This document shows, in pieces, positions 1 to 12,002 of a DNA stretch of 64,000 nt (the stretch's first letter is position 1; every line of letters begins with the position of its first letter). Below the pieces are notes generated by a model that was given only the letters and a program-made list of their open reading frames with translations, did no database searches and was not told the DNA's origin. The stretch covers positions 1 to 64,000 of the IMG/VR virus record IMGVR_UViG_3300013094_000017. One strand, given 5' to 3'. The position numbers and the translations under genes were made by a program.

Positions 1-71
1 TGTATTCCTTTAGAGGTTTTGGGTTCTCGACAAACTACGCAGGAGCAAGGATAAGATGTTTTATTAGTCAT
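1..71 (-). CDS. 5' part of a probable homing endonuclease-like gene running off the window start (MTNKTSYPCSCVVCREPKTSKGI...)
   Basis: Manual translation of the - strand. ATG at 71 is preceded by TATAAATA (77-84, - strand), as for the other endonuclease genes here. CxCxxC N-terminus. Confidence 0.45.
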   Translation of the reverse strand, partial: MTNKTSYPCSCVVCREPKTSKGI

Positions 72-117
72 ACAAGTATTTATACATCAAAACGAATTTC
101 TCCTACCAAATTGAAAT

Positions 118-211
118 ACCATACAAAAACACATTCTTCAAAGAATACAGGGTTCAATTCCCGGCCGTTGATCACGGAACTGCCAAGGTGGTGAGTGTAT
201 TCCTATATGGT
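118..211 (+). ncRNA. Candidate circularly permuted tRNA-like structured RNA
   Basis: Stems ACCATA/TATGGT (118-123/206-211) and GAATAC/GTATTC (143-148/197-202) enclose a T-arm GGG-TTCAATT-CCC (150-162), hairpin CCGT-TGATC-ACGG and a GG-containing D-like loop. Confidence 0.35.
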
Positions 212-216
212 TCAAT

Positions 217-291
217 GTTGTCTATAGTGTAGTGGTAGCACCCAATCCTGTGAAGATTGTAGTATGAGATCGATACTCATTAGACAACCCA
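217..291 (+). tRNA. tRNA-His (GTG)
   Basis: Cloverleaf with encoded G-1, C73 and CCA. Anticodon arm CAATC-CT GTG AA-GATTG. T-loop ATCGATA. Confidence 0.9.
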
Positions 292-298
292 AAGTTTT

Positions 299-373
299 GC
301 CTCGTTCATATAGTGGTTATTATGTCCGCCTGTCTAGTGGAACATAGGGGTTCGATTCCCCTACGAGGCGCCA
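299..373 (+). tRNA. tRNA-Asp (GTC)
   Basis: Acceptor GCCTCGT/ACGAGGC, loop CT GTC TA, TTCGATT T-loop, CCA. Confidence 0.93.
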
Positions 374-382
374 AATTAAAGG

Positions 383-411
383 TTGACGTGAAAAATCGTT
401 GACTATATAAT
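383..411 (+). promoter_or_regulatory. sigma70-type promoter
   Basis: TTGACG-N17-TATAAT. Confidence 0.8.
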
Positions 412-433
412 AGTAACAGTTAGAAAGATCAAT

Positions 434-506
434 TGCGGTAGAAGTGTAGTGGCGCATGATAGTCTCATAAGCTATCGGGGTGGTTCGATTCCAACGTCCG
501 CATCCA
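434..506 (+). tRNA. tRNA with CAT anticodon (Met or Ile2), imperfect acceptor and D stems
   Basis: ATAGT-CT CAT AA-GCTAT arm, TTCGATT T-loop, CCA. Two mismatches in the acceptor stem. Confidence 0.65.
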
Positions 507-522
507 TAATTAGGAGAAGTAA

Positions 523-684
523 ATGGCAGTTAAGAAAGCAAATCCAATGCAGACACGCACTGGTAAGACACGGTTAGGTCCATTGAATTTAACACAGTTA
601 CAAACTATGTTAGAAAAGACTTCTAAGAAAAAGATCAAGGCGCAGATTCAAAAGCGCATTGCAGAATTAGAAGCACGTAAGTAA
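523..684 (+). CDS. Small basic hypothetical protein (53 aa, MAVKKANPMQTRTGKTRLGPLNL...)
   Basis: Manual ORF below the track cutoff. AGGAGA RBS at 512-517. Confidence 0.75.
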   Translation: MAVKKANPMQTRTGKTRLGPLNLTQLQTMLEKTSKKKIKAQIQKRIAELEARK

Positions 685-692
685 AGTTTTAC

Positions 693-767
693 GCCCAGTT
701 AGCAGAGTGGTAATGCGCCTCACTTGTAATGAGGATATCGGGAGTTCGATTCTCTCACTGGGCACCA
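693..767 (+). tRNA. tRNA-Thr (TGT)
   Basis: GCCCAGT/ACTGGGC acceptor, CCTCA-CT TGT AA-TGAGG, CCA. Confidence 0.95.
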
Positions 768-774
768 GTATTAA

Positions 775-859
775 GCCCCTTTGGTGGAATTGGTAGACAC
801 CGCGGTCTTAGAAGCCGCCGACGAAAGTCATGAGAGTTCGAGTCTCTTGGGGGGCACCA
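775..859 (+). tRNA. tRNA-Leu (TAG)
   Basis: Class II cloverleaf, GCGGT-CT TAG AA-GCCGC, long variable arm, A73, CCA. Confidence 0.92.
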
Positions 860-869
860 AAAGTTTTAT

Positions 870-943
870 GCGGGATTAGTTTAATGGTAGAACTGCAGAT
901 TTCCAATCTCCTGGTGAGGGTTCGATTCCCTTATCCCGCTCCA
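870..943 (+). tRNA. tRNA-Gly (TCC)
   Basis: GCGGGAT/ATCCCGC acceptor, loop TT TCC AA, U73, CCA. Confidence 0.92.
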
Positions 944-1155
944 GAACACAAGGTTTACACTTTTACCTTATAGAAAGTGGGTCATTGCTAATACCAGAAC
1001 GGCAGGGTGCGCACGATGGTCTAGACCATACCACAAGTCCCACTATCCGGGAGCCTTGAAAGTATCGTGGGAGTTTTATTGTTTCTTACCATATGGAAAC
1101 AGTTGGACAGGGTAACTACTCAGTTTTGGGCTCGGTTGTGCGAGTAGCAAAACAC
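944..1155 (+). ncRNA. Structured non-coding segment (possibly the 5' domain of the GOLLD-like RNA)
   Basis: H-type pseudoknot AAGGT/ACCTT (950-954/965-969) plus CACTTT/AAAGTG (958-963/974-979). Hairpins ATGGT-CTAG-ACCAT and TCCCAC/GTGGGA. No credible ORF. Confidence 0.4.
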
Positions 1156-1161
1156 TGATTC

Positions 1162-1236
1162 GGGCTGTTAGTATACTGGGTATTATTCCTGCCTTGCACG
1201 TAGGAGAAGACGGATCGTAACCGTCACGGTCCACCA
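1162..1236 (+). tRNA. tRNA-Ala (TGC)
   Basis: G3:U70 pair, CCTGC-CT TGC AC-GTAGG, T-loop ATCGTAA, CCA. Confidence 0.9.
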
Positions 1237-1242
1237 TATTAT

Positions 1243-1319
1243 AGAGGATTAGCTCAGTTGGTACGAGCAACTGCCTTACAAGCAGAAGGTCACTGGTTCG
1301 ACCCCAGTATCCTCTACCA
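1243..1319 (+). tRNA. tRNA-Val (TAC)
   Basis: AGAGGAT/ATCCTCT acceptor, CT TAC AA loop, CCA. Confidence 0.95.
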
Positions 1320-1326
1320 GTTCTAT

Positions 1327-1405
1327 TCCGCAGAATCCGAGCTAGGCGCACGGACTTGACTGTTAATCAATGATTAGCTGGGTTCGAATCCCAGATGCGG
1401 AGCCA
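1327..1405 (+). tRNA. tRNA-Asn (GTT)
   Basis: TTGA-CT GTT AA-TCAA arm, TTCGAAT T-loop, G73, CCA. Confidence 0.88.
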
Positions 1406-1409
1406 TATT

Positions 1410-1511
1410 TGCAGAGCGTGGGCTAGTCTAGCGTCGACGTACACTCCGAGTTAGTTGCAACTAACAACAGATTGTGAAAACTAGACAACGAGGTTCGATT
1501 CCTTACTGCAT
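1410..1511 (+). ncRNA. tRNA-like element with an expanded anticodon domain and no CCA
   Basis: TGCAG/CTGCA acceptor-like stem, T-arm GAGG-TTCGATT-CCTT, and helix GTCTAG/CTAGAC (1426-31/1481-86) enclosing about 50 nt. Confidence 0.45.
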
Positions 1512-1521
1512 CTTAAATTTA

Positions 1522-1976
1522 TCGTCGATAGCCGGAGCAAATCCTTTGAGCGGCTTGAGCATAAGCAAGGCACCGAGACGCAGGTGTATATTTCCGGTGA
1601 AAGTCCGGACGGTAATAGATTTTATCTCCCTCCGTAAAGGATGGAACAGTGAGCTCTCAGTTCCCTGCAAGGTAGTAGTAGACAAGAAGCAAACAGGCGT
1701 ACTAGTCATACGCAATGTGCTGATTAGGTCGCTATGCAACCTCTGACAATAGGTCATGACTGGCCAACGATAGGAGACACTTGTAAAGCTCTCACAGTTT
1801 AACCGGTGGTGAAAATCCACAGGGGAGGCCAGTTTTGGGATAGACGGCAAGATCTTAAACGAGTCCTAAGTAGCGTCAGTAGTACGAAACACATTTTGCG
1901 CGAAATATAGATGAGCTCTCTTGTTCGAGACAATCCAGCAAGGCCTTTGGAGAAAAGGATAGCTGGGCGCCCAAAA
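1522..1976 (+). ncRNA. Large, highly structured ncRNA; GOLLD-like candidate
   Basis: About 450 nt without a credible ORF between tRNAs. Many helices: GCAGG/CCTGC, CCGG-TGAAAGT-CCGG, GTGG-TGAAAAT-CCAC, CTGGCC/GGCCAG, TTTTGGG/CCCAAAA. Blocks ATAAGCAAGGCACCG..GGTGTA, GCAAGGTAGTAGT and ATACGCAAT resemble the GOLLD 3' domain as I recall it (unverified). Confidence 0.65.
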
Positions 1977-1986
1977 ACCCTTTTAT

Positions 1987-2061
1987 GCTTCGGTAGCTCA
2001 GTGGTAGAGCAATCGGTTGATAACCGATAGGCCGGTGGATCGTTCCCACCTCGAAGCACCA
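1987..2061 (+). tRNA. tRNA-Ile (GAT)
   Basis: ATCGG-TT GAT AA-CCGAT, T-loop ATCGTTC, CCA. Confidence 0.92.
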
Positions 2062-2069
2062 TTTATATG

Positions 2070-2098
2070 TTGACAGACGGATAAACATCTGTTATACT
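2070..2098 (+). promoter_or_regulatory. sigma70-type promoter
   Basis: TTGACA-N17-TATACT. The spacer contains the inverted repeat ACAGACG/CATCTGT. Confidence 0.8.
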
Positions 2099-2265
2099 AT
2101 GTTTTAAGATTTGGAAGAAAGCCGGTACATTATGTATTCGAGGTTAGGAGAGACCGGCAAACCGTCCGATTAGAGTAGGTAATACTGCGGTTCGACTCCG
2201 CCGATTGAATTACTGTATGATTCTGCACATACCTAACAGGCCTGTATTGGCCGCAGATCGTTTAT

Positions 2266-2354
2266 GGAAGGTTATGCAATCTGGGATATTGCCGCGCACT
2301 TGAAATGCGCTGGAGCCTACGGGCCAGGAGTTCGATTCTGCCATCCTTCCGCCA
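2266..2354 (+). tRNA. tRNA-Ser (TGA)
   Basis: Class II, GCGCA-CT TGA AA-TGCGC, G73, CCA. Confidence 0.88.
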
Positions 2355-2366
2355 GTTTGAAAATAC

Positions 2367-2457
2367 GGAGAGTGGGCCGGACGGTAAGGCACCACCCTGC
2401 TAAGGTGTACACTTGTGATGAACAGGTGACAGGGTTCGACTCCCTGACTCTCCGCCA
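2367..2457 (+). tRNA. tRNA-Ser (GCT)
   Basis: GGAGAGT/ACTCTCC acceptor, CT GCT AA loop, long variable arm, CCA. Confidence 0.93.
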
Positions 2458-2462
2458 AATAC

Positions 2463-2500
2463 CCGGTGTTAGTTAAATGGATATAACAGGGGATTTCGTA
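2463..2500 (+). pseudogene. Orphan 5' half of a tRNA (apparent Arg-TCG)
   Basis: Acceptor strand, TA, D arm GTTA-AATGGATA-TAAC, GGGGA-TT TCG TA, then abruptly TAAATA. No 3' half follows. Confidence 0.6.
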
Positions 2501-2512
2501 TAAATAAACAAT

Positions 2513-2589
2513 GCGGTTGTAGCTCAGTGGATTAGAGCAACGAGCTTCTACCTCGTTGGCCGGGGGTTCGAGTCCCTCCAGCCGCACCA
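2513..2589 (+). tRNA. tRNA-Arg (TCT)
   Basis: ACGAG-CT TCT AC-CTCGT, canonical arms, CCA. Confidence 0.95.
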
Positions 2590-2604
2590 TTTAATAGAAT
2601 ACTT

Positions 2605-3288
2605 ATGTATCAAAAATTAACTAACTGTAAATATTGCAATGTTTCATTACTTGAAATGACTACTTCTCGGCGAGCAAATCACTCTCGATGGTGCAAACTA
2701 AATCCTAAGCATACTGAATATATAAATGCATTAGAAATTTCTAGAGAGAATATAGTTAATCGACGTAATCAATTTATGAAGGCTAAAGAGGATGGAAGGC
2801 CGATTCCGCCAGGAACACAGACCGGAAAACCAGGTACAATGTTAGGTAAGAAGCATTCTTCTAAAACTAAACAGCGTCAAAAAGAAAAGGCACTAGCAAG
2901 TCCTCATAGAAGATTAGTTAGATCTATTCGGAAATATACAAAAAAGGACGGAACTATAGTTAGTTTAGATTCGTTCTGGGAAGAAGCATTAGCTATTCGG
3001 CTTGATACTATAGGTGTTAACTGGATAAGACCGTCGCCTATTAAATGGATAGACAATGATAACGTAACTCATAATTACTTTCCAGATTTCTATCTACCAG
3101 AGTTTGATTTATATTTAGATCCAAAAAACCCGTATGCTGTCAAAGCTCAACAAGTTAAGATACAGTGTTTAAAACAGCAAATACAAAACCTTATAATTAT
3201 AACAAGTTTAGAGGATTGCAACAATTATATTCCTCAACCAGTATTGCCCTATAGTTCAATGGAAGAACGGCTCCCTTATAAGGAGTGA
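2605..3288 (+). CDS. Putative free-standing homing endonuclease (NUMOD3-like DNA-binding repeat plus PD-(D/E)xK-type nuclease domain)
   Basis: GKKHSSKTKQRQ repeat. Motifs SFWE, YFPDFYLP and LDPK. CxxC N-terminus. The 3' end overlaps a tRNA. Confidence 0.65.
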   Translation: MYQKLTNCKYCNVSLLEMTTSRRANHSRWCKLNPKHTEYINALEISRENIVNRRNQFMKAKEDGRPIPPGTQTGKPGTMLGKKHSSKTKQRQKEKALASPHRRLVRSIRKYTKKDGTIVSLDSFWEEALAIRLDTIGVNWIRPSPIKWIDNDNVTHNYFPDFYLPEFDLYLDPKNPYAVKAQQVKIQCLKQQIQNLIIITSLEDCNNYIPQPVLPYSSMEERLPYKE

Positions 3289-3336
3289 GTGCTAGATAAG
3301 CCGCTAATGTAGGTTCGAGTCCTACTAGGGGTACCA
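3245..3336 (+). tRNA. Atypical tRNA with TAT anticodon (Ile?) and long variable arm
   Basis: D arm GTTC-AATGGAA-GAAC, GCTCC-CT TAT AA-GGAGT, about 20-nt variable arm, GTAGG-TTCGAGT-CCTAC, CCA. The top two acceptor pairs are mismatched. Confidence 0.7.
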
Positions 3337-3338
3337 AT

Positions 3339-3413
3339 GCTGATGTAGCGTAGAGGTAGCGCAACGCCTTGGTAAGGCGTAGGTCGTGGGTTCAACTCCC
3401 ATCATCAGCACCA
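3339..3413 (+). tRNA. tRNA-Thr (GGT)
   Basis: GCTGATG/CATCAGC acceptor, ACGCC-TT GGT AA-GGCGT, CCA. Confidence 0.93.
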
Positions 3414-3432
3414 GCAATACAGTAAGATCAAT

Positions 3433-3460
3433 TGGCTCATGGTGTAGTGGTAGCACAACT
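3433..3460 (+). pseudogene. Orphan 5' fragment of a tRNA (Gln-like TGG start)
   Basis: TGGCTCA-TG-GTGT-AGTGGTA-GCAC-A, then broken just before the TAAATA promoter and HNH gene. Confidence 0.55.
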
Positions 3461-3502
3461 CAAAAAAATCCTTTATGTTGCTAAATACAGTAAGGAGATA
3501 AT

Positions 3503-4063
3503 ATGTTAGTTACTATTATAGAATACATGAACCAGACGAGAGAAGAAAGACGCTCTCGATTAAAGTTAGATGAACCATGCGATGAGCGCGGATTAGTGTA
3601 CAGTTATCATTTAACTGGGCTATTAGCGTACTTAACAAACACAAGTATACCTAAAAAAGGTGATAACGCTATTGTGTGTCATGGATGTAACAACGCAAAA
3701 TGTTCAAACCCAAATCATTTATATTGGGGATCTTATAAGGATAATCATACGGATCAGGTTGAAAATGGAACATGGGATAGTCCGTATGCTAGGGCTAAGA
3801 AAAAATACAGTACTGTTGAGATGAATGAGATATACTCAAACAATGCCAAAGGTAATAAAGGTAATAAACAACCTAGATCCGAAGAGCATAAAAGAAAAAT
3901 ATCTGAGTCAATGAAAAAAGTTCAGCAAGAACTAAATCCTAATTTAGGAAAAGTAAGAAACAAAGTAGAATGCCCTCATTGTGGAAAGCAAGGTGCTATG
4001 AATACAATGAGCCGATGGCATTTTGATAATTGTCTTAATAGGCGTGTGGTGAAGATGGCTTAA
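3503..4063 (+). CDS. HNH homing endonuclease with NUMOD3 and C-terminal Zn finger
   Basis: CHGCNNAKCSNPNHL...DN (HNH motif), RSEEHKRKISES, CPHCGK...HFDNC. TAAATA at 3482 and AAGGAG RBS. Confidence 0.85.
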   Translation: MLVTIIEYMNQTREERRSRLKLDEPCDERGLVYSYHLTGLLAYLTNTSIPKKGDNAIVCHGCNNAKCSNPNHLYWGSYKDNHTDQVENGTWDSPYARAKKKYSTVEMNEIYSNNAKGNKGNKQPRSEEHKRKISESMKKVQQELNPNLGKVRNKVECPHCGKQGAMNTMSRWHFDNCLNRRVVKMA

Positions 4064-4117
4064 CACACTGGATTTTGATTCCAGCATTCCTAGGTTCGAA
4101 TCCTAGCACGCCTGCCA
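4040..4117 (+). tRNA. tRNA-Gln (TTG), 5' end overlapping the HNH stop
   Basis: AGGCGTG/CACGCCT acceptor, CTGGA-TT TTG AT-TCCAG, G73, CCA. Confidence 0.9.
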
Positions 4118-4237
4118 GAACAGTCCGGGAACAGCTCTCCTTTCGTAAGAAAGTGTAACTGACTATAGCTGGGATTTACCAGTGAACTTACAGGACGCTG
4201 TAAGGTACGGGCATACAGGAGGATAACTCCAATCTAT

Positions 4238-4311
4238 TCCGGTGTAGTATAATGGCAGTGCGACGGTCTCCAAAACCGTTAGTGGGGGTTCGATTCCCTC
4301 CACCGGAGCCA
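4238..4311 (+). tRNA. tRNA-Trp (CCA)
   Basis: ACGGT-CT CCA AA-ACCGT, G73, CCA. Confidence 0.95.
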
Positions 4312-4320
4312 AACAATGTG

Positions 4321-4349
4321 TTGACTTTTAGTTAAGTTGATAGTATAAT
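4321..4349 (+). promoter_or_regulatory. sigma70-type promoter
   Basis: TTGACT-N17-TATAAT. Confidence 0.8.
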
Positions 4350-4376
4350 GTGCTTTTATTTGAAATGGAGCATGAA

Positions 4377-4841
4377 ATGTCAAAAGTTATTAAATCAGAG
4401 TATGTTGAAGCAGCCATGGAACAATTAGATAGTGCGGCTAAATTACTCAAAACAGCCTACACCAATCCAAACAAAAATCTTGTGTTAATATTAGACATGA
4501 TTGATGATATTTGGGGGCAATTAGAATTGCTAGCTGATACACAGTACGACAAAGAAAATCCAGGTAAAGAAATGACGCAGGCTCAATATGACACTGAGCA
4601 CAGTGAGCGGGTGGCTAGGATTAAAGCCCTACAAGAAGTTACCATTACCAAAGTAGACAAGGCCACATTCAAAGCCATTAGTGATGATTTATACACAGCA
4701 ATTGGCAATGTCAGTGGCAAATACAATCTGTCTATTGCCTTTCCGTTATCCAGTTTCTCATTCCGTGCCTATGATTCGGAGAATCCCGAGCAGTATTGGC
4801 CACTAGGTAGAGAGTTTGATACAGAAATAAATCCATTATAG
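4377..4841 (+). CDS. Hypothetical protein
   Basis: ORF track. Start moved to the ATG after the GGAG RBS. Confidence 0.7.
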   Translation: MSKVIKSEYVEAAMEQLDSAAKLLKTAYTNPNKNLVLILDMIDDIWGQLELLADTQYDKENPGKEMTQAQYDTEHSERVARIKALQEVTITKVDKATFKAISDDLYTAIGNVSGKYNLSIAFPLSSFSFRAYDSENPEQYWPLGREFDTEINPL

Positions 4842-4842
4842 G

Positions 4843-4871
4843 TTGACAGGTACCATATGCTCCTGTATTAT
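4843..4871 (+). promoter_or_regulatory. sigma70-type promoter
   Basis: TTGACA-N17-TATTAT. Confidence 0.6.
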
Positions 4872-4899
4872 TAATGAATAGTCAAAAGGACAAAAGAAT

Positions 4900-5469
4900 A
4901 TGAACGTTACATTACGTAAAGCAAGTGCGTTACAGAACGCAATCAACGACACAATCAAAGGCATTCAGCTTAAAGTAGCTGTAAACCTAAGTGAGTTCCA
5001 AGATGCAGAAACAGTAATTTCTAAATCTCGCCAAGCATTGTTAAACAATGTTGATCGCAAGGTAGCACTAACCAAGGCATTGTATGCAATTCGCGCCTCA
5101 GTAGGTGCAGCAAACAACGCCTCAGTAGATGCACTGTTGGCACAGGTAGCACAGGTTGAAAAAACAATCCAAATCTACACAAACTTAGCTGAAACAGAAG
5201 TGCGTGAAGATGCCACAGTTATTGCAGGTAAGTTGGATAAGATTAAGAACCGCACAGCAGATGCTCGTCCAAGTTACTACGGACACAGTGACGAAGTAAA
5301 CACCAGTGTATTAACACAAGATGATATTGAATCTTTCCGAGGTTTCATTGCACTGGCAAAGAAAAACAAACAGACTTTGCAGGATCAAATCCTTGAAGCA
5401 AACGTTCGCACTGAAATCACTTTAGATGCAGACACAGTAGCAACACTAACAGCAGAAAAATTGCTGTAA
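4900..5469 (+). CDS. Alpha-helical coiled-coil protein (weak resemblance to DIP1984-like proteins)
   Basis: ORF track, AAAGGA RBS, heptad pattern. The family resemblance is by eye only. Confidence 0.7.
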   Translation: MNVTLRKASALQNAINDTIKGIQLKVAVNLSEFQDAETVISKSRQALLNNVDRKVALTKALYAIRASVGAANNASVDALLAQVAQVEKTIQIYTNLAETEVREDATVIAGKLDKIKNRTADARPSYYGHSDEVNTSVLTQDDIESFRGFIALAKKNKQTLQDQILEANVRTEITLDADTVATLTAEKLL

Positions 5470-5474
5470 TAGTT

Positions 5475-5745
5475 TTTGGTGGTTTGGCTCTAGGGCTAAA
5501 ATCACCCAGATGTGAGAAAGAGACGAGGATTGGCAAGGACATCATACATCGTATGATTCCATACTTAATGAGCAATCGCCTTGAAAAGCGATCGTGTTTG
5601 CGTGTTCCGGTTATTATATAAATTTGTTTATTGCCACCGTTGAAATATGCAAGCCCCTGTGTTTTGAACATTGTCTTTTGTCAGCGGATATTATAATAAT
5701 ATCTTTTGTCATTTGCTGTGCCATTTACTTACTTTCTCAATCTGT
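5475..5745 (+). ncRNA. Structured RNA directly downstream of the coiled-coil gene
   Basis: 13-bp closing helix CAGAT(G)TGAGAAAG/CTTTCTCAATCTG (5507-20/5732-44), internal hairpins, and duplicated CTTTTGTCA flanking a hairpin. Confidence 0.5.
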
Positions 5746-5751
5746 TTCTTC

Positions 5752-5829
5752 GCACACGTGGCTGAGTGGCCCAAAGCAGCGGCCTGCAAAGCCGTAAAAC
5801 CGCCGGTTCAAATCCGGCCGTGTGCTCCA
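5752..5829 (+). tRNA. tRNA-Cys (GCA)
   Basis: GCACACG/CGTGTGC acceptor, CT GCA AA loop, U73, CCA. Confidence 0.93.
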
Positions 5830-5830
5830 T

Positions 5831-5906
5831 AGTAATGTAGCATAGTGGCTAATGCGGCACCTTCATACGGTGTATATCGTGAGTTCGAGTCTCACCATTA
5901 CTACCA
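5831..5906 (+). tRNA. tRNA with CAT anticodon (Met or lysidine Ile2)
   Basis: AGTAATG/CATTACT acceptor, GCACC-TT CAT AC-GGTGT, CCA. Confidence 0.9.
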
Positions 5907-6024
5907 GCTTTACATTAACAACCTTAACGCAACTCGGTACACGGATACCTGATCAGTGGGAGTGTTTGACATAGTCGGACCGCTGCAACACTGTGGGTGG
6001 CAAAGCCGTGCTCGTTGTTAATTT

Positions 6025-6100
6025 GCCCTGTTAGTTCAACGGATTAGAATTAGAGTCTTCGAAACTCAGGATGGGGGTTCGATTCCCTCACGGGGCACCA
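6025..6100 (+). tRNA. tRNA-Arg (TCG)
   Basis: Loop CT TCG AA, GCCCTGT/ACGGGGC acceptor, CCA. Confidence 0.9.
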
Positions 6101-6150
6101 AACAAGTAATCGCATAATGTAGCGGAATACACTACGTTATGTAAATCAAT

Positions 6151-6226
6151 GCGGCTGTAGCTCAGTTGGTAGAGCGTCTGCTTGCCAAGCAGAAGGTCAC
6201 GAGTTCGAGACTCGTTAGCCGCTCCA
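6151..6226 (+). tRNA. tRNA-Gly (GCC)
   Basis: TCTGC-TT GCC AA-GCAGA, U73, CCA. Confidence 0.95.
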
Positions 6227-6236
6227 TTTATTTTGA

Positions 6237-6265
6237 TTGACAGTTGGTAATACCTATGCTATAAT
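6237..6265 (+). promoter_or_regulatory. sigma70-type promoter with extended -10
   Basis: TTGACA-N17-TATAAT, with TG at -15/-14. Confidence 0.8.
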
Positions 6266-6289
6266 ATGCTTGTACAGTTAGGAAATGAT

Positions 6290-6595
6290 ATGAAACACTA
6301 CGTATATGAACCAGGTATAAAGAAAATTGAAAAAGTATTACCGTATTCTGTGGCTGTTCCGCAGGGTTATAAAACTCACGCACAGGCCCTATGCCAACGA
6401 ATATTAGGCAAAAGATATTGTCGTTGGGATCCAAGATGGCGCAGAGTTAATAATTGGACAGTGAAAACCACTACCAGGTGGACAGTATATGAAGATGCAG
6501 TTTGGCACTACAAAGATGGTATACTTTACTTCAAAGATGAAGCTAATACTAAAATGCTTACAATGGTATTATTAAGTAAAACCAAAAGGAGATAG
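6290..6595 (+). CDS. Hypothetical protein
   Basis: ORF track. Likely start after the AGGA RBS. Confidence 0.65.
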   Translation: MKHYVYEPGIKKIEKVLPYSVAVPQGYKTHAQALCQRILGKRYCRWDPRWRRVNNWTVKTTTRWTVYEDAVWHYKDGILYFKDEANTKMLTMVLLSKTKRR

Positions 6596-6599
6596 TACT

Positions 6600-7082
6600 A
6601 TGAAACCATGGATTGAAAACATCAGCTTAGAAGATGTAAAGAAAGGCTATCACCACGATGCTGGCGATAATTCTATGCTAATTCAAATCGTAGATCCTGG
6701 TGTAGAGTTTCCAACTCCTAAGTACAAGTTTAAGCGAGTATCACAGTACTTCTTCCTTGATGTAGAGGATAGAGATATTCCCGGTGCTATATTTGATGCG
6801 GCAATCACTGACGCAGACGCTATCGGTATTGCCGAAGATTTGAAATACGCATTGGCCAATAACATGAACGTAATTGTTCACTGTCATATGGGTGTGTGCC
6901 GTAGTGGTGCTGTAGCAGAAGTAGGTGTTATGTTAGGTTTCCAAGATACTGAAAAGTATCGTATTCCTAACACAATGGTCAAGCGTAAACTTATGGAATA
7001 CTTTGGTATGACATACACAGAGTCCGAGCTCCCTAAAGGGGCTTGGGCACTTGACGAAAATGGAATTAGACATTATTATTAA
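6600..7082 (+). CDS. Cys-based protein tyrosine/dual-specificity phosphatase-like protein
   Basis: VHCHMGVCRS is an HCX5R(S) signature. Confidence 0.8.
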   Translation: MKPWIENISLEDVKKGYHHDAGDNSMLIQIVDPGVEFPTPKYKFKRVSQYFFLDVEDRDIPGAIFDAAITDADAIGIAEDLKYALANNMNVIVHCHMGVCRSGAVAEVGVMLGFQDTEKYRIPNTMVKRKLMEYFGMTYTESELPKGAWALDENGIRHYY

Positions 7083-7088
7083 GAATAT

Positions 7089-7164
7089 GCTACCTTAGCT
7101 CATCTGGTAGAGCACCGGCCTGAAGAGTCGGGTGTGCTTGGTTCAAGTCCAAGAGGTAGCACCA
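7089..7164 (+). tRNA. tRNA-Phe (GAA)
   Basis: CCGGC-CT GAA GA-GTCGG, GCTACCT/AGGTAGC acceptor, CCA. Confidence 0.93.
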
Positions 7165-7180
7165 AACAAAGGAAATAGAT

Positions 7181-7348
7181 ATGGCAGGCATTTACGGAGT
7201 TTATGAAAAATACGAAGGTCCAGAAGACTGTGATGTAGCCTATTCTAAAGTACAATCTGGCGAATGGGATCTAGCACGCTTTAAGGAATATGTGAGCTGT
7301 GTTGAGAAGATCACATGGCAAGATGCCACCGCAGATGAGAGTTTCTAA
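7181..7348 (+). CDS. Small hypothetical protein (55 aa, MAGIYGVYEKYEGPEDC...)
   Basis: Manual ORF with AAGGA RBS. Confidence 0.65.
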   Translation: MAGIYGVYEKYEGPEDCDVAYSKVQSGEWDLARFKEYVSCVEKITWQDATADESF

Positions 7349-7350
7349 TC

Positions 7351-7611
7351 TTGACAGAAGATGAACAACTAATGTGGGATGTGCTCAAGGCATCACCTGA
7401 TGCTGATTGGGTAGAGTTCCGTAAACAGCATAATCGACTTTGGCTAACTAAAGATCGCAGAATTGTCCTGATAAAGAACATGCAAAGCGACTACATTCTT
7501 AGTTGTGTTAATATGTTGGAAGCATTAAGTCAAACCAACACTGCGGCCTATAAGGGATTGATTAAAGAATTGCGCCAAAGAGGAAGTCAGATACCTGACA
7601 ACTCAATATAG
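7351..7611 (+). CDS. Hypothetical protein
   Basis: ORF track, tight packing. Confidence 0.6.
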   Translation: MTEDEQLMWDVLKASPDADWVEFRKQHNRLWLTKDRRIVLIKNMQSDYILSCVNMLEALSQTNTAAYKGLIKELRQRGSQIPDNSI

Positions 7612-7627
7612 AAAAGAGGATAACGAT

Positions 7628-8083
7628 ATGAACAGTACATTTAGCAGTTTGATTGGACACCGCATCAACGCAGTGTTTCTCGCCAACGCAAATGAGACCA
7701 TTGTTTTCCGCACGACTGAGGGAAAGTATCTACGATTTGATACCTGCAATGATTGTTGCAACACTGTTTGGTTTAATCACATTAACGGTAGTGGCTGTGT
7801 TGGGCAGGGTGACACCTTTGATCTTATCCGTGGTGCATTAGTTATAGGCTGCGAGGATAAAGATTGGACTGAGAATAGAGCCTGGACCCCAGAAGATGGC
7901 GGCGATTACGGTGATACTATTCAAGACGGATTCTACACCATCAAGACTGACCGCGGTTATATTGATCTAGAAGTGCGTAACGATCACAACGGCTACTACG
8001 GTGGCACTGTTATGGAAAATGAAGATCTTGATTGGGAGATTACCGATCTAGAAAATCTTGTAGAGATTAAGGAAGATTTCTAA
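7628..8083 (+). CDS. Hypothetical phage protein (DLEVRNDHNGYYGG motif)
   Basis: ORF track, GAGGA RBS. Confidence 0.75.
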   Translation: MNSTFSSLIGHRINAVFLANANETIVFRTTEGKYLRFDTCNDCCNTVWFNHINGSGCVGQGDTFDLIRGALVIGCEDKDWTENRAWTPEDGGDYGDTIQDGFYTIKTDRGYIDLEVRNDHNGYYGGTVMENEDLDWEITDLENLVEIKEDF

Positions 8084-8084
8084 A

Positions 8085-8360
8085 ATGAAAATTATCAAGT
8101 TAGACCGCAGACACAGAATGCGGCGAGATTTTGATATGCGATATGCTCTAGTTTGGGAAAGTTATGGATATGTTTGCAGACCATATGAAAAATGGTTAGA
8201 AAAGCAATTTGGAGTAAGTTGGTATACACATAATCCTCATTGGAAGTCAGGATACGGTAGCAATTCTAGCCGTGGCGATCGTCCAACTTTCTATGTCGCA
8301 GTCAAAGAAAAAAGTACATTAACAATGATGTTTTTGGCATTAGGAGATACAAATGAATAA
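8085..8360 (+). CDS. Hypothetical protein
   Basis: ORF track, coupled spacing. Confidence 0.7.
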   Translation: MKIIKLDRRHRMRRDFDMRYALVWESYGYVCRPYEKWLEKQFGVSWYTHNPHWKSGYGSNSSRGDRPTFYVAVKEKSTLTMMFLALGDTNE

Positions 8361-8697
8361 ATTTGATTGGGGCGGTATATTCAGCAAAGTGCCAGACCAT
8401 ACTCAAGAGGCACTCGAACGCTATTTCCTGTACGGATTAGAGCCAGGCAGTTTCTTACAAGCGGTATTAAGCAATGACCTGTACAGTGCTGTGGCCCGTG
8501 CAGATACTTGGAACAAAACTGCTATAGCAGAAATTGTAACTTGGATTGCTCACAACGCACCGGAAGGCAGTTGGGGACATCCTGACTATTACCGTGAATG
8601 GGTTAACAAAGGTCCTGCATTTGTTCGATTTGAAAAGAGTCGTGTTTGGAATATTTTGTCTAATGAACACACAGAAATGAAGGAACCTGAGTGGTGA
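8353..8697 (+). CDS. Hypothetical protein
   Basis: ORF track, AGGAG RBS. Confidence 0.75.
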   Translation: MNKFDWGGIFSKVPDHTQEALERYFLYGLEPGSFLQAVLSNDLYSAVARADTWNKTAIAEIVTWIAHNAPEGSWGHPDYYREWVNKGPAFVRFEKSRVWNILSNEHTEMKEPEW

Positions 8698-8882
8698 AAC
8701 AGAAACCAAAATGGGTTGAAACTCGAGAAGCTCTTAAAACAATGGGTCAAGAACCTTTAGAGTTTATTGGCAAAATGGGCGCCGATGGGGTCATTAATGG
8801 CTTACTACCTAACGGTGAAGAGTACGGTTGGTATAAACGTAGAGGCACTAAAGATACTAAATTTAAAGGAAGGAAAGTTTAA
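8691..8882 (+). CDS. Hypothetical protein
   Basis: ORF track. GTG start overlaps the upstream stop. Confidence 0.65.
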   Translation: MVKQKPKWVETREALKTMGQEPLEFIGKMGADGVINGLLPNGEEYGWYKRRGTKDTKFKGRKV

Positions 8883-9454
8883 TGGCTAAAATATTTATGA
8901 TTAGCGATACGCACTTTGGACACAAAGGCGTTTGTGAATTTAAGCGTGATGACGGTGTTACTGATTTACGCCCGTACGATACCGCAGACGAGATGGATGC
9001 AGATATGATTGAAAAGTGGAATGCCAAGGTTGGCCCAAACGATAAAGTTTATCACTTAGGTGATGTTGTAATTAATCGCAAGGCATTGTCTACATTGGGC
9101 AAGTTGAATGGTGAAAAGGTTCTAATCAAAGGCAACCACGATATCTTTAGGTTGGAGGAATATACTCCGTACTTTAAGGATGTTCGCAGTTATCACGTCC
9201 TTAATGGATTGATCCTAAGCCATATTCCGATTCATGAAGCTAGTTTGGGCCGTTTCGGCACTAACATTCACGGACACTTGCACGCCAGTAGAGTTATGAA
9301 GGATGGTGCTATTGATCCTCGGTACTTTAACATGTGTGTTGAGAATCATAATTATGCTCCAGTTGAATTTGAAGAAGTTATGGAGTTAATTAGAGCAGAG
9401 GGCGGCACAGTTGGGTTTCGAGAACACAAATGGCCAAACGAACTAGTAGGGTAA
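8882..9454 (+). CDS. Calcineurin-like metallophosphoesterase
   Basis: Motifs SDTHFGH, HLGD, GNHD, SH and HGHLH. Confidence 0.9.
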   Translation: MAKIFMISDTHFGHKGVCEFKRDDGVTDLRPYDTADEMDADMIEKWNAKVGPNDKVYHLGDVVINRKALSTLGKLNGEKVLIKGNHDIFRLEEYTPYFKDVRSYHVLNGLILSHIPIHEASLGRFGTNIHGHLHASRVMKDGAIDPRYFNMCVENHNYAPVEFEEVMELIRAEGGTVGFREHKWPNELVG

Positions 9455-9460
9455 GCCTTT

Positions 9461-9484
9461 AAATAGGGCTTGCCCTATTTTTTT
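9461..9484 (+). terminator. Intrinsic terminator
   Basis: AAATAGGG-CTTG-CCCTATTT followed by a T run. Confidence 0.75.
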
Positions 9485-9490
9485 GACTTA

Positions 9491-9628
9491 TTAATCGCAG
9501 TCTGAATATGCTTGTACTAAGCGTGCAACACATTCTGTGTCACCTGGCTTACATACAATATTTGGTATACTTGGAGTTGTTTCTTCTTGCAGGGGTTGGA
9601 TTGGTAATGTATCTGTAGTATTTGACAT
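9491..9628 (-). CDS. Small acidic protein (45 aa, MSNTTDTLPIQPLQEETTPSIPNIVCKPGDTECVARLVQAYSDCD)
   Basis: Manual ORF with AAAGGTG RBS and a TAAATA motif upstream on the - strand. Confidence 0.6.
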   Translation of the reverse strand: MSNTTDTLPIQPLQEETTPSIPNIVCKPGDTECVARLVQAYSDCD

Positions 9629-9741
9629 TTTGTGTCACCTTTCTAAAATGAGATTGTGTCTCTAATGATTTATTTATTAAACTACTATTGTATATTAAAG
9701 TACCAATATTGTCAACACCTTGATAAATTTTGATAAATTAG

Positions 9742-9770
9742 TTGACATACTATAAAAAACACTATATACT
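9742..9770 (+). promoter_or_regulatory. sigma70-type promoter
   Basis: TTGACA-N17-TATACT. Confidence 0.8.
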
Positions 9771-9776
9771 AAACAA

Positions 9777-10031
9777 ATGAGATACACTCCAGAACAAATT
9801 ATTGAATTAGCAAAAGAAGTAGAACTTACAGACAACGATATCGAGTGGGATAATTTACCTCTTGAAAAAGATCGTATCTATCAAATCCTCGGTAGTCAAA
9901 CTTTTGATATGTATAGCCGGTGGACTCAAATGGAAGATAGTGATAGCGGCGAAGCTATTATGTTAGCAACCATCACTAAACTACTAGTAGAAAATTTCGT
10001 ATTAAATCTTAAATTAAATCAAGGAAAATAA
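9777..10031 (+). CDS. Hypothetical protein
   Basis: ORF track. Confidence 0.65.
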   Translation: MRYTPEQIIELAKEVELTDNDIEWDNLPLEKDRIYQILGSQTFDMYSRWTQMEDSDSGEAIMLATITKLLVENFVLNLKLNQGK

Positions 10032-10032
10032 A

Positions 10033-10239
10033 ATGGCTAAAACAAACTCCAGTTTCAAGATTGGCAAGATGGTTAAACTATCAATGGGTGCAACGCTTAA
10101 TAAAGAGCAACGTTTAATCTACAAGAACTGTATGATTGATGCTAAACAGTCATATATTGCTAATCGTAATCGTAAACATAAAGATCCTATTGCACGTGAT
10201 AGCAGCAATGATCAAAACAAAGATGCTCCAAAGGCCTAA
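10033..10239 (+). CDS. Small basic hypothetical protein
   Basis: ORF track, AAGGA RBS. Confidence 0.65.
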   Translation: MAKTNSSFKIGKMVKLSMGATLNKEQRLIYKNCMIDAKQSYIANRNRKHKDPIARDSSNDQNKDAPKA

Positions 10240-10242
10240 TTA

Positions 10243-11535
10243 ATGGATTATAAAGTAGCGGACATTGGCCTAGCCGCTTGGGGCCACAAAGAAATTGCAA
10301 TCGCAGAAACGGAAATGCCGGGATTAATGGCAATTCGTAACGAATTAAAACCAAATCAACCACTTAAAGGTGCTCGCATTGTGGGGTCATTACACATGAC
10401 TATTCAAACTGCTGTGCTGGTACAGACTTTAGTTGCTCTAGGCGCAGAAGTGCGTTGGAGTAGCTGTAATATTTTTTCAACACAAGACCACGCCGCAGCA
10501 GCCTTGGCAGAACAAGGTATTCCTGTATATGCTTGGAAAGGTGAAACTGAAGCTGACTACTGGTGGTGCATTGAACAGACTATTAAAAATCCAAACGATC
10601 CAACCTGGAAACCCAATATGTTGTTAGATGATGGACATGATCTAACTTGGTATATCCACACTAACTATCCAGAACTATTAGATGGTATCTATGGTGTTAC
10701 TGAAGAAACAACTACAGGTATTCACAAGATTAACGAAGCTATTGCTAATGGTAGTTTCCGTCTACGTGCTATTAATGTTAACGATAGTGTAACTAAAAGT
10801 AAGTTTGATAACTTATATGGTTGCCGTGAAAGTCTAGTAGATTCGATCAAACGTGCTACCGATGTTATGATTGCTGGTAAGACCGCAGTAGTAGCAGGCT
10901 ACGGTGATGTGGGTAAAGGTTCGGCCGCTAGTCTTAAGGCACTTGGTGCGCAGGTTTGGGTAACTGAAATTGACCCAATCTGTGCCCTACAAGCCGCAAT
11001 GGAAGGCTACAAGGTAGTTACCATGGACTATGCCGCAGACAAAGCAGACATCTTTGTAACAGCCACAGGCAATGTAGACATCATCACACATGCGCACATG
11101 TTAAAGATGAAACACAATGCTATTGTATGTAACATTGGGCACTTCGACAGCGAAATTCAAATTGCTAGTTTGGCTGGCTACGAGTGGGACGAGATTAAAC
11201 CGCAAGTAGATCACGTGACTATGCCTAGTGGTAATAAGATAATTATCTTAGCCAAAGGTCGATTGGTAAATTTAGGTTGTGGTACAGGACATCCTAGCTT
11301 TGTTATGTCAAACAGCTTTACTAATCAAGTAATTGCACAGGTTGAAATGTTCCAAAACTATGCTAACTATGAGATTGGTAAGATGTATTTGTTACCTAAA
11401 CACCTAGATGAAAAGGTAGCTAGTCTACACCTAGCACAGATTGGCGCAGAGCTAACCGACCTAACACCTGCGCAAGCAGACTACATTGGCGTAAAGGTAC
11501 AAGGTCCATACAAACCAGAAACATATAGGTACTAA
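10243..11535 (+). CDS. ahcY: Adenosylhomocysteinase (SAH hydrolase)
   Basis: Motifs [69 protein letters not shown] and C-terminal YRY. Confidence 0.97.
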
Positions 11536-11536
11536 A

Positions 11537-11893: not shown

Positions 11894-11894
11894 T

Positions 11895-11989: not shown

Positions 11990-12002
11990 TAAATACACTA
12001 CA

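What the first reader, a model, noticed from the sequence alone, without database searches (positions are those of the whole stretch)
2463..4117. Homing-endonuclease cassettes that break tRNA genes and bring replacement tRNAs
Seen twice: an orphan tRNA 5' fragment (2463-2500, ending right after an apparent TCG anticodon loop; 3433-3460), then TAAATA, then an endonuclease ORF whose last codons and stop lie inside the 5' half of a complete tRNA (ORF 2605-3288 in the TAT tRNA; HNH 3503-4063 in tRNA-Gln). The same bases encode both protein and tRNA. Established: free-standing HEGs such as T4 SegB home into tRNA regions. Inference: these cassettes cut tRNA genes of co-infecting relatives and carry a cleavage-resistant tRNA fused to their own 3' end.
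Basis: partly seen in the sequence, partly recalled or inferred. Interest (0 to 1): 0.6.

Follow-up and report, generated by a model that had tools for sequence, protein, structure and literature searches.

The report
Nuclease cassettes that split tRNA genes
In this lake jumbo phage, two selfish nuclease genes each sit inside a broken tRNA gene (Arg-UCU and Gln-UUG) and each brings an intact spare tRNA of the same anticodon; the same layout recurs in dozens of other phages and seems not to have been described.

Summary

**The two fragments**
- Window 2463-2497 is exactly nt 1-35 of a tRNA-Arg(UCU) gene that is intact in at least 15 other lake-phage contigs. The "TCG anticodon" is a junction artefact.
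- Window 3433-3459 is nt 1-27 of a tRNA-Gln(UUG) gene. That gene is intact, in the same gene order, in relatives lacking both nucleases (L174, L235).

**Cassette 1 (about 2498-3240)**
- The spare tRNA is this upstream Arg gene, not the downstream UAU tRNA, which is resident.

**Cassette 2 (3460-4117)**
- It holds an HNH nuclease whose last 24 nt overlap an intact divergent tRNA-Gln. The same overlap occurs in three other phages.

**Wider pattern**
- Of 58 distinct relatives of cassette 1, 31 have an orphan Arg 5' half and about 47 an adjacent tRNA-Arg(UCU).
- In 11 of 13 loci the 5' and 3' remnants pair 7/7 as one split gene.
- Cultured T4-like and Kuttervirus phages show the same layout.

Cleavage, homing and immunity of the spare tRNA are inferred, not shown. 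I rate it a new variant of free-standing homing endonucleases.

The parts
2463..2497 (+). Orphan 5' part (nt 1-35, up to anticodon position 35) of the resident tRNA-Arg(UCU) gene. Its 3' part is absent from the whole contig.
   Evidence: Identical to the first 35 nt of intact genes in 15 IMG/VR contigs. Lake metagenome contigs join 2497 to the missing anticodon-stem and T-arm sequence. No 3' half anywhere in the genome.
2499..2506 (+). TATAAATA, a T4-late-promoter-like motif at the left end of cassette 1.
   Evidence: [T/C]ATAAATA lies between the 5' fragment and the spare tRNA in nearly all family loci. It is not enriched in the window overall, 4 found against about 8 expected. Promoter function is inferred.
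2513..2589 (+). Intact, divergent tRNA-Arg(UCU) carried by cassette 1 (the spare). It is the only tRNA-Arg(UCU) in the contig.
   Evidence: ARAGORN and Rfam tRNA at 69.3 bits. 53 of 77 positions identical to the broken resident allele. A tRNA-Arg(UCU) lies directly upstream of the ORF in most family loci.
2605..3288 (+). 227-aa putative homing endonuclease. N-terminal CCHC zinc-finger-like motif, a NUMOD3-like motif, and a C-terminal PD-(D/E)XK nuclease domain. Family homology ends near residue 210 (about nt 3234). The last 14 codons are UAU-tRNA sequence.
   Evidence: PHROG 15137 'endonuclease', E 2.7e-9. Alignment A1 has invariant P160, D161 and K174. PDB profile hit to T7 endonuclease I, E 0.007. 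AF2 pLDDT 86.5. Fold hits: TnsA Z 8.9, VRR-NUC 7.4, Vsr 7.2, I-Bth0305I 6.6. 80 related loci kept of 84 found.
3245..3336 (+). Resident class-II-like tRNA(UAU), 92 nt with a long variable arm. The end of ORF 1 overlaps it. Acceptor pairs 1:72 and 2:71 are mismatched.
   Evidence: Same tat, Thr(GGU), Gln order as in L174 and L235. DNA homology to the L235 copy starts at 3249. Homology to cassettes L035 and L037 ends at 3229/3233.
3339..3413 (+). Resident tRNA-Thr(GGU), the flank between the two cassettes.
   Evidence: Same position in L174 and L235.
3433..3459 (+). Orphan 5' part (nt 1-27, ending in the 5' strand of the anticodon stem) of the resident tRNA-Gln(UUG) gene.
   Evidence: Exact match to intact genes in 14 IMG/VR contigs. 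The intact gene sits at the same position in L174, L235 and L241.
3469..3496 (+). Leader of cassette 2. A weak hairpin pairs UCCUU with the ribosome-binding AAGGA, and TAAATA (3482-3487) lies in its loop.
   Evidence: -8 kcal/mol, z -1.6, not significant alone. CTAAATA is conserved in L031 and L257. Strong equivalent hairpins occur in cultured-phage relatives, z -3.3 to -6.1.
3503..4063 (+). 186-aa HNH (His-Me finger) putative homing endonuclease with a NUMOD3-like motif and a C-terminal CxxC...HxxxC motif. Its last 7 codons and TAA stop lie in tRNA-Gln nt 1-24.
   Evidence: PHROG HNH / homing endonuclease families, E 3e-9 to 1e-8. Pfam zf-His_Me_endon E 0.0017 and HNH_3 E 0.029, both below cut-off. 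222 relatives, many carrying PF05551. The same 23-24 nt overlap with tRNA-Gln occurs in L031/L032 and L257.
4040..4117 (+). Intact, divergent tRNA-Gln(UUG) carried by cassette 2 (the spare). It is the only tRNA-Gln in the contig.
   Evidence: ARAGORN and Rfam 60.9 bits. 57 of 81 aligned positions identical to the broken allele.
4118..4237 (+). Resident flank: a conserved structured element of about 120 nt that follows the intact tRNA-Gln in relatives. It marks the right boundary of cassette 2.
   Evidence: Alignment A2. Consensus fold with compensatory changes in 13 of 27 pairs.

Best explanation
Two free-standing homing-endonuclease cassettes have each landed inside a resident tRNA gene of the phage's tRNA array, and each carries a full-length, sequence-divergent tRNA with the same anticodon.

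Cassette 1 (about 2498-3240) holds TATAAATA, a tRNA-Arg(UCU) and a PD-(D/E)XK nuclease. It entered the resident tRNA-Arg(UCU) gene between anticodon positions 34/35 and 36.

Cassette 2 (3460-4117) holds a leader with TAAATA, an HNH nuclease and an overlapping tRNA-Gln(UUG). It replaced the resident tRNA-Gln from nt 28 to its end.

Shown here:
- the break points;
- the intact 'empty' alleles in relatives;
- the recurrence of the layout in two unrelated nuclease families;
- the nuclease folds.

Inferred:
- In a mixed infection the nuclease cuts the intact allele in or near the anticodon stem-loop.
- The break is repaired from the cassette-bearing genome, using the leftover tRNA pieces or neighbouring tRNAs as short homology.
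- The cassette's own tRNA escapes cutting because its stems differ, and it keeps decoding intact, so the insertion costs the phage little.
- Because tRNA processing would cut the nuclease mRNA, the overlap probably also keeps nuclease levels low, as proposed for T4 segB.
For: Fragments and empty sites:
- The fragments equal intact genes base for base.
- Relatives without the nucleases have an intact Gln between Thr(GGU) and the conserved element.
- L174 comes from the same sample and carries both intact alleles.
- The spare tRNAs are the only Arg(UCU) and Gln genes in the contig.

The PD-(D/E)XK family:
- 58 distinct cassettes. 31 have an orphan Arg 5' half, about 47 an adjacent tRNA-Arg(UCU), and at least 11 an orphan 3' remnant at the ORF end.
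- The 5' and 3' remnants of one locus pair 7/7 in 11 of 13 loci, against 11 of 156 cross-locus pairings.
- L035 is a precise split at TTT|CTAC. Contigs with the unsplit arrangement (Arg followed by the UAU tRNA) exist in L138 and L166.
- The cassette DNA is 74-77% identical in three contigs whose flanks are otherwise unrelated.
- Nuclease motif and fold.

The HNH family:
- L257 has a Gln fragment, the HNH gene, an overlapping Gln and a 3' remnant.
- L258 has a split Gln with no spare.
- L259 has a Leu fragment, the HNH gene, an intact Leu(UAA) and a matching 3' remnant.

Cultured phages:
- IME341, PhaxI and Apostate show the same layouts.

Precedent:
- T4 SegB, a tRNA-region homing endonuclease whose stop codon abuts tRNA-Arg (PMC2330249).
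Against: - No biochemical evidence that either protein cuts DNA, or cuts tRNA genes.
- The HNH hits are below Pfam's curated cut-offs.
- The 3' halves of both broken genes are missing in this genome. Its own junctions could therefore reflect later deletions rather than the original insertion.
- Some family members have no spare tRNA (L258, Apostate) or no tRNA context at all (L069, L099, L104), so the spare is not obligatory.
- Lake-metagenome contigs gave no clean evidence of filled and empty alleles in otherwise identical genomes.
- TATAAATA is not enriched in the window, and the HNH leader hairpin is weak.
Confidence: 0.75

Rival explanations
1. The fragments are ordinary scars of illegitimate recombination in a fast-shuffling tRNA array. 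The nuclease genes are passengers that did not cause the breaks.
For: The tRNA arrays of these phages are highly mosaic. Chimeric junctions at shared loop sequence exist, such as GGATTT in L035. Another endonuclease gene (GIY-YIG) sits elsewhere in the array of L235.
Against: The break lies at the same nucleotide of the same tRNA species, directly beside the same nuclease family, in dozens of unrelated contexts. A second, unrelated nuclease family shows the same pattern.
Confidence: 0.08
2. The retained tRNA 5' halves are functional parts kept by selection, not scars. They could be homology arms, processing or terminator signals, or decoy half-tRNAs.
For: Fragment 1 has no mutation relative to intact alleles. 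The spacing of fragment, TATAAATA and tRNA is very regular across loci.
Against: The fragments differ widely in sequence between loci and match the local 3' remnant rather than each other. Some are decayed (L055, L072). A recent insertion also explains the perfect identity.
Confidence: 0.08
3. The split tRNA genes are still functional through an intron or joining of halves, with the ORF acting as an intron-encoded endonuclease. Known examples are group I introns in bacterial tRNA anticodon loops.
For: The insertion site is in the anticodon loop. In Apostate and L258 both halves are complete.
Against: No group I intron or other ribozyme hit in window 1-12500 at E<=1. The ORF fills almost the whole insert. 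Both 3' halves are absent from this genome. In most loci nt 36-43 are lost.
Confidence: 0.02
4. ORF 2605-3288 is a housekeeping junction resolvase, as some database records annotate it (T7 endonuclease I-like), and is not mobile.
For: Profile similarity to T7 endonuclease I. Annotation as 'putative endodeoxyribonuclease I' in Acinetobacter phages.
Against: It is absent from syntenic relatives. It always lies in tRNA arrays at a tRNA break point. It carries zinc-finger and NUMOD3-like DNA-binding modules typical of homing endonucleases.
Confidence: 0.03

Closest known systems
T4 SegB, a free-standing GIY-YIG homing endonuclease in the T4 tRNA cluster (PMC2330249, PMC2988022, PMC13096335)
   Same: - A free-standing nuclease gene inside a phage tRNA array, next to tRNA-Arg.
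- It targets tRNA-gene DNA and drags neighbouring tRNA genes along in crosses.
- Its stop codon abuts or overlaps tRNA-Arg, so tRNA processing is thought to limit expression.
   Different: - SegB is GIY-YIG; the nucleases here are PD-(D/E)XK and HNH.
- SegB recognises the T-arm motif and sits between genes. Here the cassette sits inside one specific tRNA gene, at the anticodon or anticodon stem, leaves its halves behind and brings a same-anticodon spare.
Group I intron endonucleases in tRNA anticodon loops, e.g. I-Ssp6803I (PD-(D/E)XK) in cyanobacterial tRNA-fMet (own knowledge; PDB 2ost, Z 4.4)
   Same: - The insertion point is in the anticodon loop of a tRNA gene.
- The nuclease has a PD-(D/E)XK fold.
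- The cost of insertion is neutralised.
   Different: In those cases the cost is neutralised by RNA splicing. Here no intron is detectable, and the cost is met by carrying a second, complete tRNA gene.
'Fractured genes' or genes-in-pieces made by free-standing endonuclease insertion (Dassa et al. 2009, PMC2677866; Aeh1 nrdA/mobE, own knowledge)
   Same: A free-standing endonuclease gene splits a host gene at a conserved site, and the element persists because function is rescued.
   Different: There the target is a protein gene, and rescue is by split inteins or subunit assembly. Here the target is a tRNA gene, and rescue is by a spare copy inside the cassette.
T5 F-TflI/II/IV, HNH endonucleases in the T5 tRNA region (cited in PMC2330249; primary paper not read)
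   Same: HNH-type endonuclease genes located among phage tRNA genes.
   Different: The text I read does not report broken target genes with spare copies. Not checked further.
Integrase-driven elements that insert into tRNA genes and restore the 3' end (own knowledge)
   Same: A mobile element uses a tRNA gene as its landing site and carries sequence that keeps a functional tRNA.
   Different: Those use a recombinase and duplicate only the 3' part. Here there is no integrase, a whole tRNA is supplied, and the 5' part of the old gene is left as a stub.

Membership tests
Free-standing homing endonuclease gene (intronless homing) | Encodes a nuclease of a recognised homing-endonuclease class | tested here: met
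   ORF 1 has a PD-(D/E)XK motif and fold. ORF 2 matches HNH / His-Me PHROG families at E about 1e-8 and has relatives carrying PF05551.
Free-standing homing endonuclease gene (intronless homing) | Present or absent at a conserved site among related genomes | tested here: met
   L174, L235 and L241 lack both ORFs and carry an intact tRNA-Gln with the same flanks. Intact tRNA-Arg(UCU) occurs in at least 15 contigs.
Free-standing homing endonuclease gene (intronless homing) | Not embedded in a self-splicing intron or intein | tested here: met
   No intron family hit in window 1-12500 at E<=1.
Free-standing homing endonuclease gene (intronless homing) | Site-specific cleavage of the allele that lacks the gene, with the carrier allele resistant | not testable with these tools
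   Only indirect evidence. The spare and the broken alleles differ at about 30% of positions, mainly in the stems.
Free-standing homing endonuclease gene (intronless homing) | Preferential inheritance (gene conversion) in mixed infection | not testable with these tools
   Uncultured phage. Cultured carriers of the family exist: IME341, PhaxI, Apostate.
PD-(D/E)XK nuclease superfamily (ORF 2605-3288) | Catalytic PD...(D/E)xK motif on the restriction-endonuclease-like fold | tested here: met
   P160 and D161, then D172-P-K174 (E-V-K in L112/L113). P160, D161 and K174 are invariant in 35 sequences and D172 is at least 90% conserved. Residues 104-220 match TnsA, VRR-NUC, Vsr, Bax1 and I-Bth0305I at Z 6.6-8.9.
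HNH / His-Me finger (ORF 3503-4063) | Match to curated HNH or His-Me models | tested here: inconclusive
   Pfam zf-His_Me_endon scores 19 bits against a cut-off of 27. HNH_3 scores 14.4 against 24.8. PHROG HNH families are at E 1e-8. I-PpoI is at E 0.056. The H...N...H/N residues are visible in the sequence.
Group I intron with intron-encoded endonuclease in a tRNA gene | Ribozyme core and both tRNA exons present | tested here: not met
   No Rfam intron hit. The 3' exons are absent from the contig.
SegB-like (GIY-YIG) tRNA-region endonucleases | GIY-YIG catalytic domain | tested here: not met
   Neither ORF has GIY-YIG hits. A GIY-YIG ORF does occur in the array of the relative L235.

The most novel reading that the evidence does not exclude
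Homing endonucleases that break a tRNA gene and deliver a spare may be a main engine that builds, reshuffles and diversifies phage tRNA arrays. An arms race between nuclease recognition and target sequence would select spare tRNAs with radically altered bodies. Candidates are the tRNA-Arg(UCU) genes in many cassettes that lack a normal D arm and have a long variable arm. The cassettes could also spread tRNA variants that resist host anticodon nucleases.
Probability: 0.3. Interest if true: 0.8.

Novelty: new variant of a known kind. Interest (0 to 1): 0.7.

Why it matters
Homing endonucleases normally avoid harming their host in one of two ways. They sit between genes, or they hide in self-splicing introns or inteins. 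This looks like a third way: insert into an essential-type RNA gene and carry a replacement copy.

- It has arisen in two unrelated nuclease families.
- It involves at least four kinds of tRNA gene: Arg-UCU, Gln, Leu and CAU-anticodon (Met/Ile) tRNAs.
- It would explain orphan tRNA halves and 'extra' or odd tRNAs in phage genomes.
- It would explain why phage tRNA arrays are so mosaic.
- It gives annotators a simple signature: tRNA half, then TATAAATA, then a tRNA and a nuclease gene in either order.
- The predictions can be tested directly in cultured E. coli and Acinetobacter phages that carry related cassettes.

Tried and rejected
- **DNA searches against cultured phages.** They found only isolated tRNA matches and no close relative.
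- **Intron reading.** Rejected, as there was no ribozyme family hit.
- **First automatic scan for fragments.** It used local alignment, confused T arms of neighbouring tRNAs, and was replaced by half-tRNA profile searches (then 75).
- **Foldseek against PDB.** It gave only weak rows. The exhaustive aligner gave a clear PD-(D/E)XK picture.
- **TATAAATA as a genome-wide promoter.** It is not enriched in the window, so promoter function is kept only as an inference.
- **Pattern-based search for HNH relatives in viral contigs.** It found only one other lineage. The large protein search was then used.
- **The UAU tRNA as a 'replacement'.** Rejected: it is resident and syntenic, and no broken UAU gene exists.
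- **Lake-metagenome contigs laid on the region.** Most joints came from other organisms' tRNAs. I used only the joins that rebuild an intact tRNA-Arg and an adjacent intact tRNA-Gln.
- **Protein tree.** The careful tree did not finish, so a quick tree was used.
- **Not used.** The metagenome-contig scan and complex prediction.
Full report
**Setting.**
- The window is the first 64 kb of a 259-kb IMG/VR contig, a jumbo phage from lake water.
- Positions 218-7164 hold an array of 20 tRNA genes, all with encoded CCA.
- L002 is a 100% identical second assembly.
- No cultured phage is close at the DNA level.

**Checking the observation.**
- Both ORFs and both overlaps are as described. ORF 2605-3288 runs 44 nt into the 92-nt UAU tRNA (3245-3336). 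ORF 3503-4063 runs 24 nt into tRNA-Gln (4040-4117).
- Fragment 1 (2463-2497) is not a look-alike. It is identical to the first 35 nt of an intact tRNA-Arg(UCU) gene found in 15 viral contigs, among them L174 from the same sample.
- The intact gene continues T-A-C after TTTC, whereas the window continues with GTATAAATA. So the 'TCG anticodon' is a junction artefact, and the break lies at anticodon position 35/36, or 34/35 if the C belongs to the insert.
- Fragment 2 (3433-3459) equals nt 1-27 of an intact tRNA-Gln(UUG) present in 14 contigs.
- Neither missing 3' half exists anywhere in the 259-kb contig. The cassette tRNAs are its only Arg(UCU) and Gln genes.

**Empty sites.**
- L174, L235, L241 and related contigs come from relatives. 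They share protein genes at 71-82% DNA identity and tRNAs at up to 100%.
- Their gene order is Ser(UGA), tat, Thr(GGU), intact Gln, a conserved element of about 120 nt, then Trp, Cys, Met. In L235 an extra GIY-YIG endonuclease ORF sits between the element and Trp.
- The window has the same order. The difference is that Gln nt 28-74 plus a 10-nt spacer are replaced by 3460-4117, the HNH gene plus a different tRNA-Gln.
- The right boundary is at 4117/4118, where both tRNA-Gln alleles end in the same eight bases.
- For cassette 1, DNA homology to the related cassettes in L035 and L037 spans 2462/2475 to 3229/3233. Homology to the resident UAU tRNA of L235 starts at 3249.
- So the right junction lies in the first bases of the UAU tRNA. 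That fits the T.T and G.G mismatches at acceptor pairs 1:72 and 2:71.
- Lake metagenome contigs also rebuild an intact tRNA-Arg of the fragment-1 type. In one run it is followed directly by the spacer and an intact tRNA-Gln of the fragment-2 type.

**The first nuclease and its family.**
- The 227-aa protein has no Pfam or NCBIfam family. It does match PHROG 15137, 'endonuclease'.
- An alignment of 35 relatives shows an N-terminal Cys-Cys-His-Cys motif, a NUMOD3-like motif and an invariant PD...(D/E)xK signature.
- A profile finds T7 endonuclease I at E 0.007.
- The AlphaFold model (pLDDT 86.5) matches PD-(D/E)XK nucleases over residues 104-220: TnsA Z 8.9, VRR-NUC 7.4, Vsr 7.2, and the homing endonuclease I-Bth0305I 6.6.
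- 84 related loci were found in IMG/VR and the best 80 kept. They reduce to 58 distinct cassettes.
- Half-tRNA profile searches and inspection give these counts:
  - an orphan tRNA-Arg 5' half upstream in 31;
  - a canonical intact tRNA-Arg(UCU) between that half and the ORF in about 30;
  - a non-canonical tRNA-Arg(UCU)-like gene in about 15 more;
  - the intact tRNA downstream instead in 2;
  - an orphan 3' remnant at the ORF's end in at least 11.
- The downstream neighbour varies (tat, Met, Arg-CCU, Leu, Gly, Ser, Trp), and the ORF often runs into it.
- In 11 of 13 loci with both remnants, the 5' acceptor strand pairs 7/7 with the 3' acceptor strand of the same locus, although the sequences differ between loci. 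Only 11 of 156 cross-locus pairings do so. The cassette therefore sits inside one split gene.
- L035 is a precise split (TTT|CTAC) with nothing lost. Its insert ends with the 5' half of a UAU tRNA, joined to the Arg 3' half at a shared GGATTT. L138 and L166 show the unsplit arrangement, Arg followed 6-8 nt later by the UAU tRNA. This implies a donor in which the ORF already abutted a UAU tRNA, as in our window.
- Family homology ends at about residue 210. In L035 the stop is a TAA in the D loop, which is CAA in the window. That explains the 14 extra codons.
- The type of spare tRNA is clustered on the ORF tree but switches occasionally: 20 changes against 31.6 in shuffles (quick tree).

**The second nuclease and its family.**
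- The HNH assignment rests on PHROG families (E about 1e-8), sub-threshold Pfam hits and 222 relatives, many carrying PF05551.
- Contexts of the relatives:
  - L031/L032 and L257 (63-66% identity): a tRNA-Gln 5' stub, a CTAAATA leader, and the ORF overlapping an intact tRNA-Gln by 23-24 nt in the same frame, with the D-loop TAA as stop. In L257 a matching 3' remnant follows.
  - L258 (60%): the ORF splits a tRNA-Gln whose halves pair, with no spare.
  - L259 (47%): a tRNA-Leu stub, a hairpin containing TATAAATA, the ORF, an intact tRNA-Leu(UAA) and an 11-nt 3' remnant that pairs 7/7 with the stub.
  - L260 and L261: the ORF abuts tRNA-Leu(UAG).
- So an unrelated nuclease family uses the same layout.

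**Cultured phages.** Distant members of the first family (25-43% identity) occur in several cultured phages.
- E. coli phage IME341 (Dhakavirus): an Arg stub, then AATAAATA inside a strong hairpin, then the ORF. The ORF's TAA stop is the anticodon loop of an intact T4-type tRNA-Arg(UCU).
- Kuttervirus PhaxI: a stub that looks like the 5' part of a tRNA-Met, a hairpin, and the ORF overlapping an intact tRNA-Met.
- Acinetobacter phage Apostate: a tRNA(CAT) split in the anticodon loop, with both halves complete.
- The leader hairpins are significant, z -3.3 to -6.1. They resemble the known T4 design in which a late promoter lies inside a hairpin that hides the ribosome-binding site (PMC2330249).
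- In the window's HNH leader the hairpin is weak, z -1.6.

**Mechanism.**
- Shown: the insertion sites, the empty alleles, the spare tRNAs and the nuclease folds.
- Inferred from established homing biology (T4 SegB, SegF/G, MobE; PMC2988022, PMC2330249):
  - the nuclease cuts the intact allele;
  - repair copies the cassette;
  - the spare escapes because it differs at about 30% of positions, mostly in stems.
- The constant break position and the L035 junction suggest that the cut is at or near the anticodon loop.

**Comparison and novelty.**
- T4 SegB is the nearest known case. It sits in a tRNA array next to tRNA-Arg, targets tRNA-gene DNA, and has its stop abutting a tRNA.
- It is GIY-YIG, sits between genes and recognises the T arm.
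- Full-text searches found no description of endonuclease cassettes that split a tRNA gene and carry a same-anticodon spare.
- I rate it a new variant of a known kind.

Noticed in passing
window 3245-3336; also L003, L009, L017, L023, L026, L029, L174, L235 and others: The 'tRNA-Ile(UAU)' is class-II-like: 90-95 nt, a long variable arm with a conserved CAGAT(A/T)A loop, and A73. 31 of 33 distinct UAU tRNAs in the fetched lake-phage loci have this form, in two structural types. Stem changes between the window and L235 are compensatory. Mukai et al. (PMC5389517) report Ser-type 'allo-tRNAs' in which UAU is a predominant anticodon. AUA may therefore be read unusually.
   Followed up: partly
L050, L051, L060, L076, L080, L086, L092, L093, L094, L105 (100-130 nt upstream of the nuclease ORF): Many cassettes carry a tRNA-Arg(UCU)-like gene with no D arm in the usual place and a long variable arm holding D-loop-like sequence (TAACTGGA or AGTTGGGTGGA). 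ARAGORN misses or miscalls them.
   Followed up: partly
window 4118-4237 (also L174:453-571, L235:4374-4492 minus strand, L238:3466-3585): A conserved element of about 120 nt between tRNA-Gln and tRNA-Trp. Its multi-hairpin consensus fold has compensatory changes in 13 of 27 pairs. It may be a small RNA like the T4 tRNA-cluster species 1/2 RNAs.
   Followed up: partly
window 2101-2265: A second conserved non-coding element (81-91% identical in L174, L236, L238, L242) with a T-arm-like GGTTCGACTCC. No tool calls it a tRNA.
   Followed up: no
window 435-502: An Rfam tRNA hit just above the gathering score (29.5 bits) that ARAGORN does not call.
   Followed up: no
window 11895-11989: A 95-nt tRNA-like gene with an irregular anticodon loop and a long extra arm. 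ARAGORN calls it 'tRNA-???'. Rfam gives a weak tRNA-Sec hit at 24 bits.
   Followed up: no
L235:3720-4367 (minus strand): The relative that lacks both cassettes carries a different endonuclease gene, GIY-YIG plus NUMOD3, 215 aa. It lies between the conserved element and tRNA-Trp. These tRNA arrays are endonuclease hot spots.
   Followed up: no
L250 (Acinetobacter phage Apostate, NC_049491.1 75.4-76.4 kb): A suppressor-like tRNA (anticodon CUA, annotated tRNA-Pyl) lies directly upstream of the split tRNA(CAT) and the nuclease gene.
   Followed up: no
G000 contig 133037-133249 (+) and 250188-250313 (-), outside the window: Two further ORFs share only the C-terminal DNA-binding module of the HNH protein (40-41% identity). 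They are probably other endonuclease genes.
   Followed up: no
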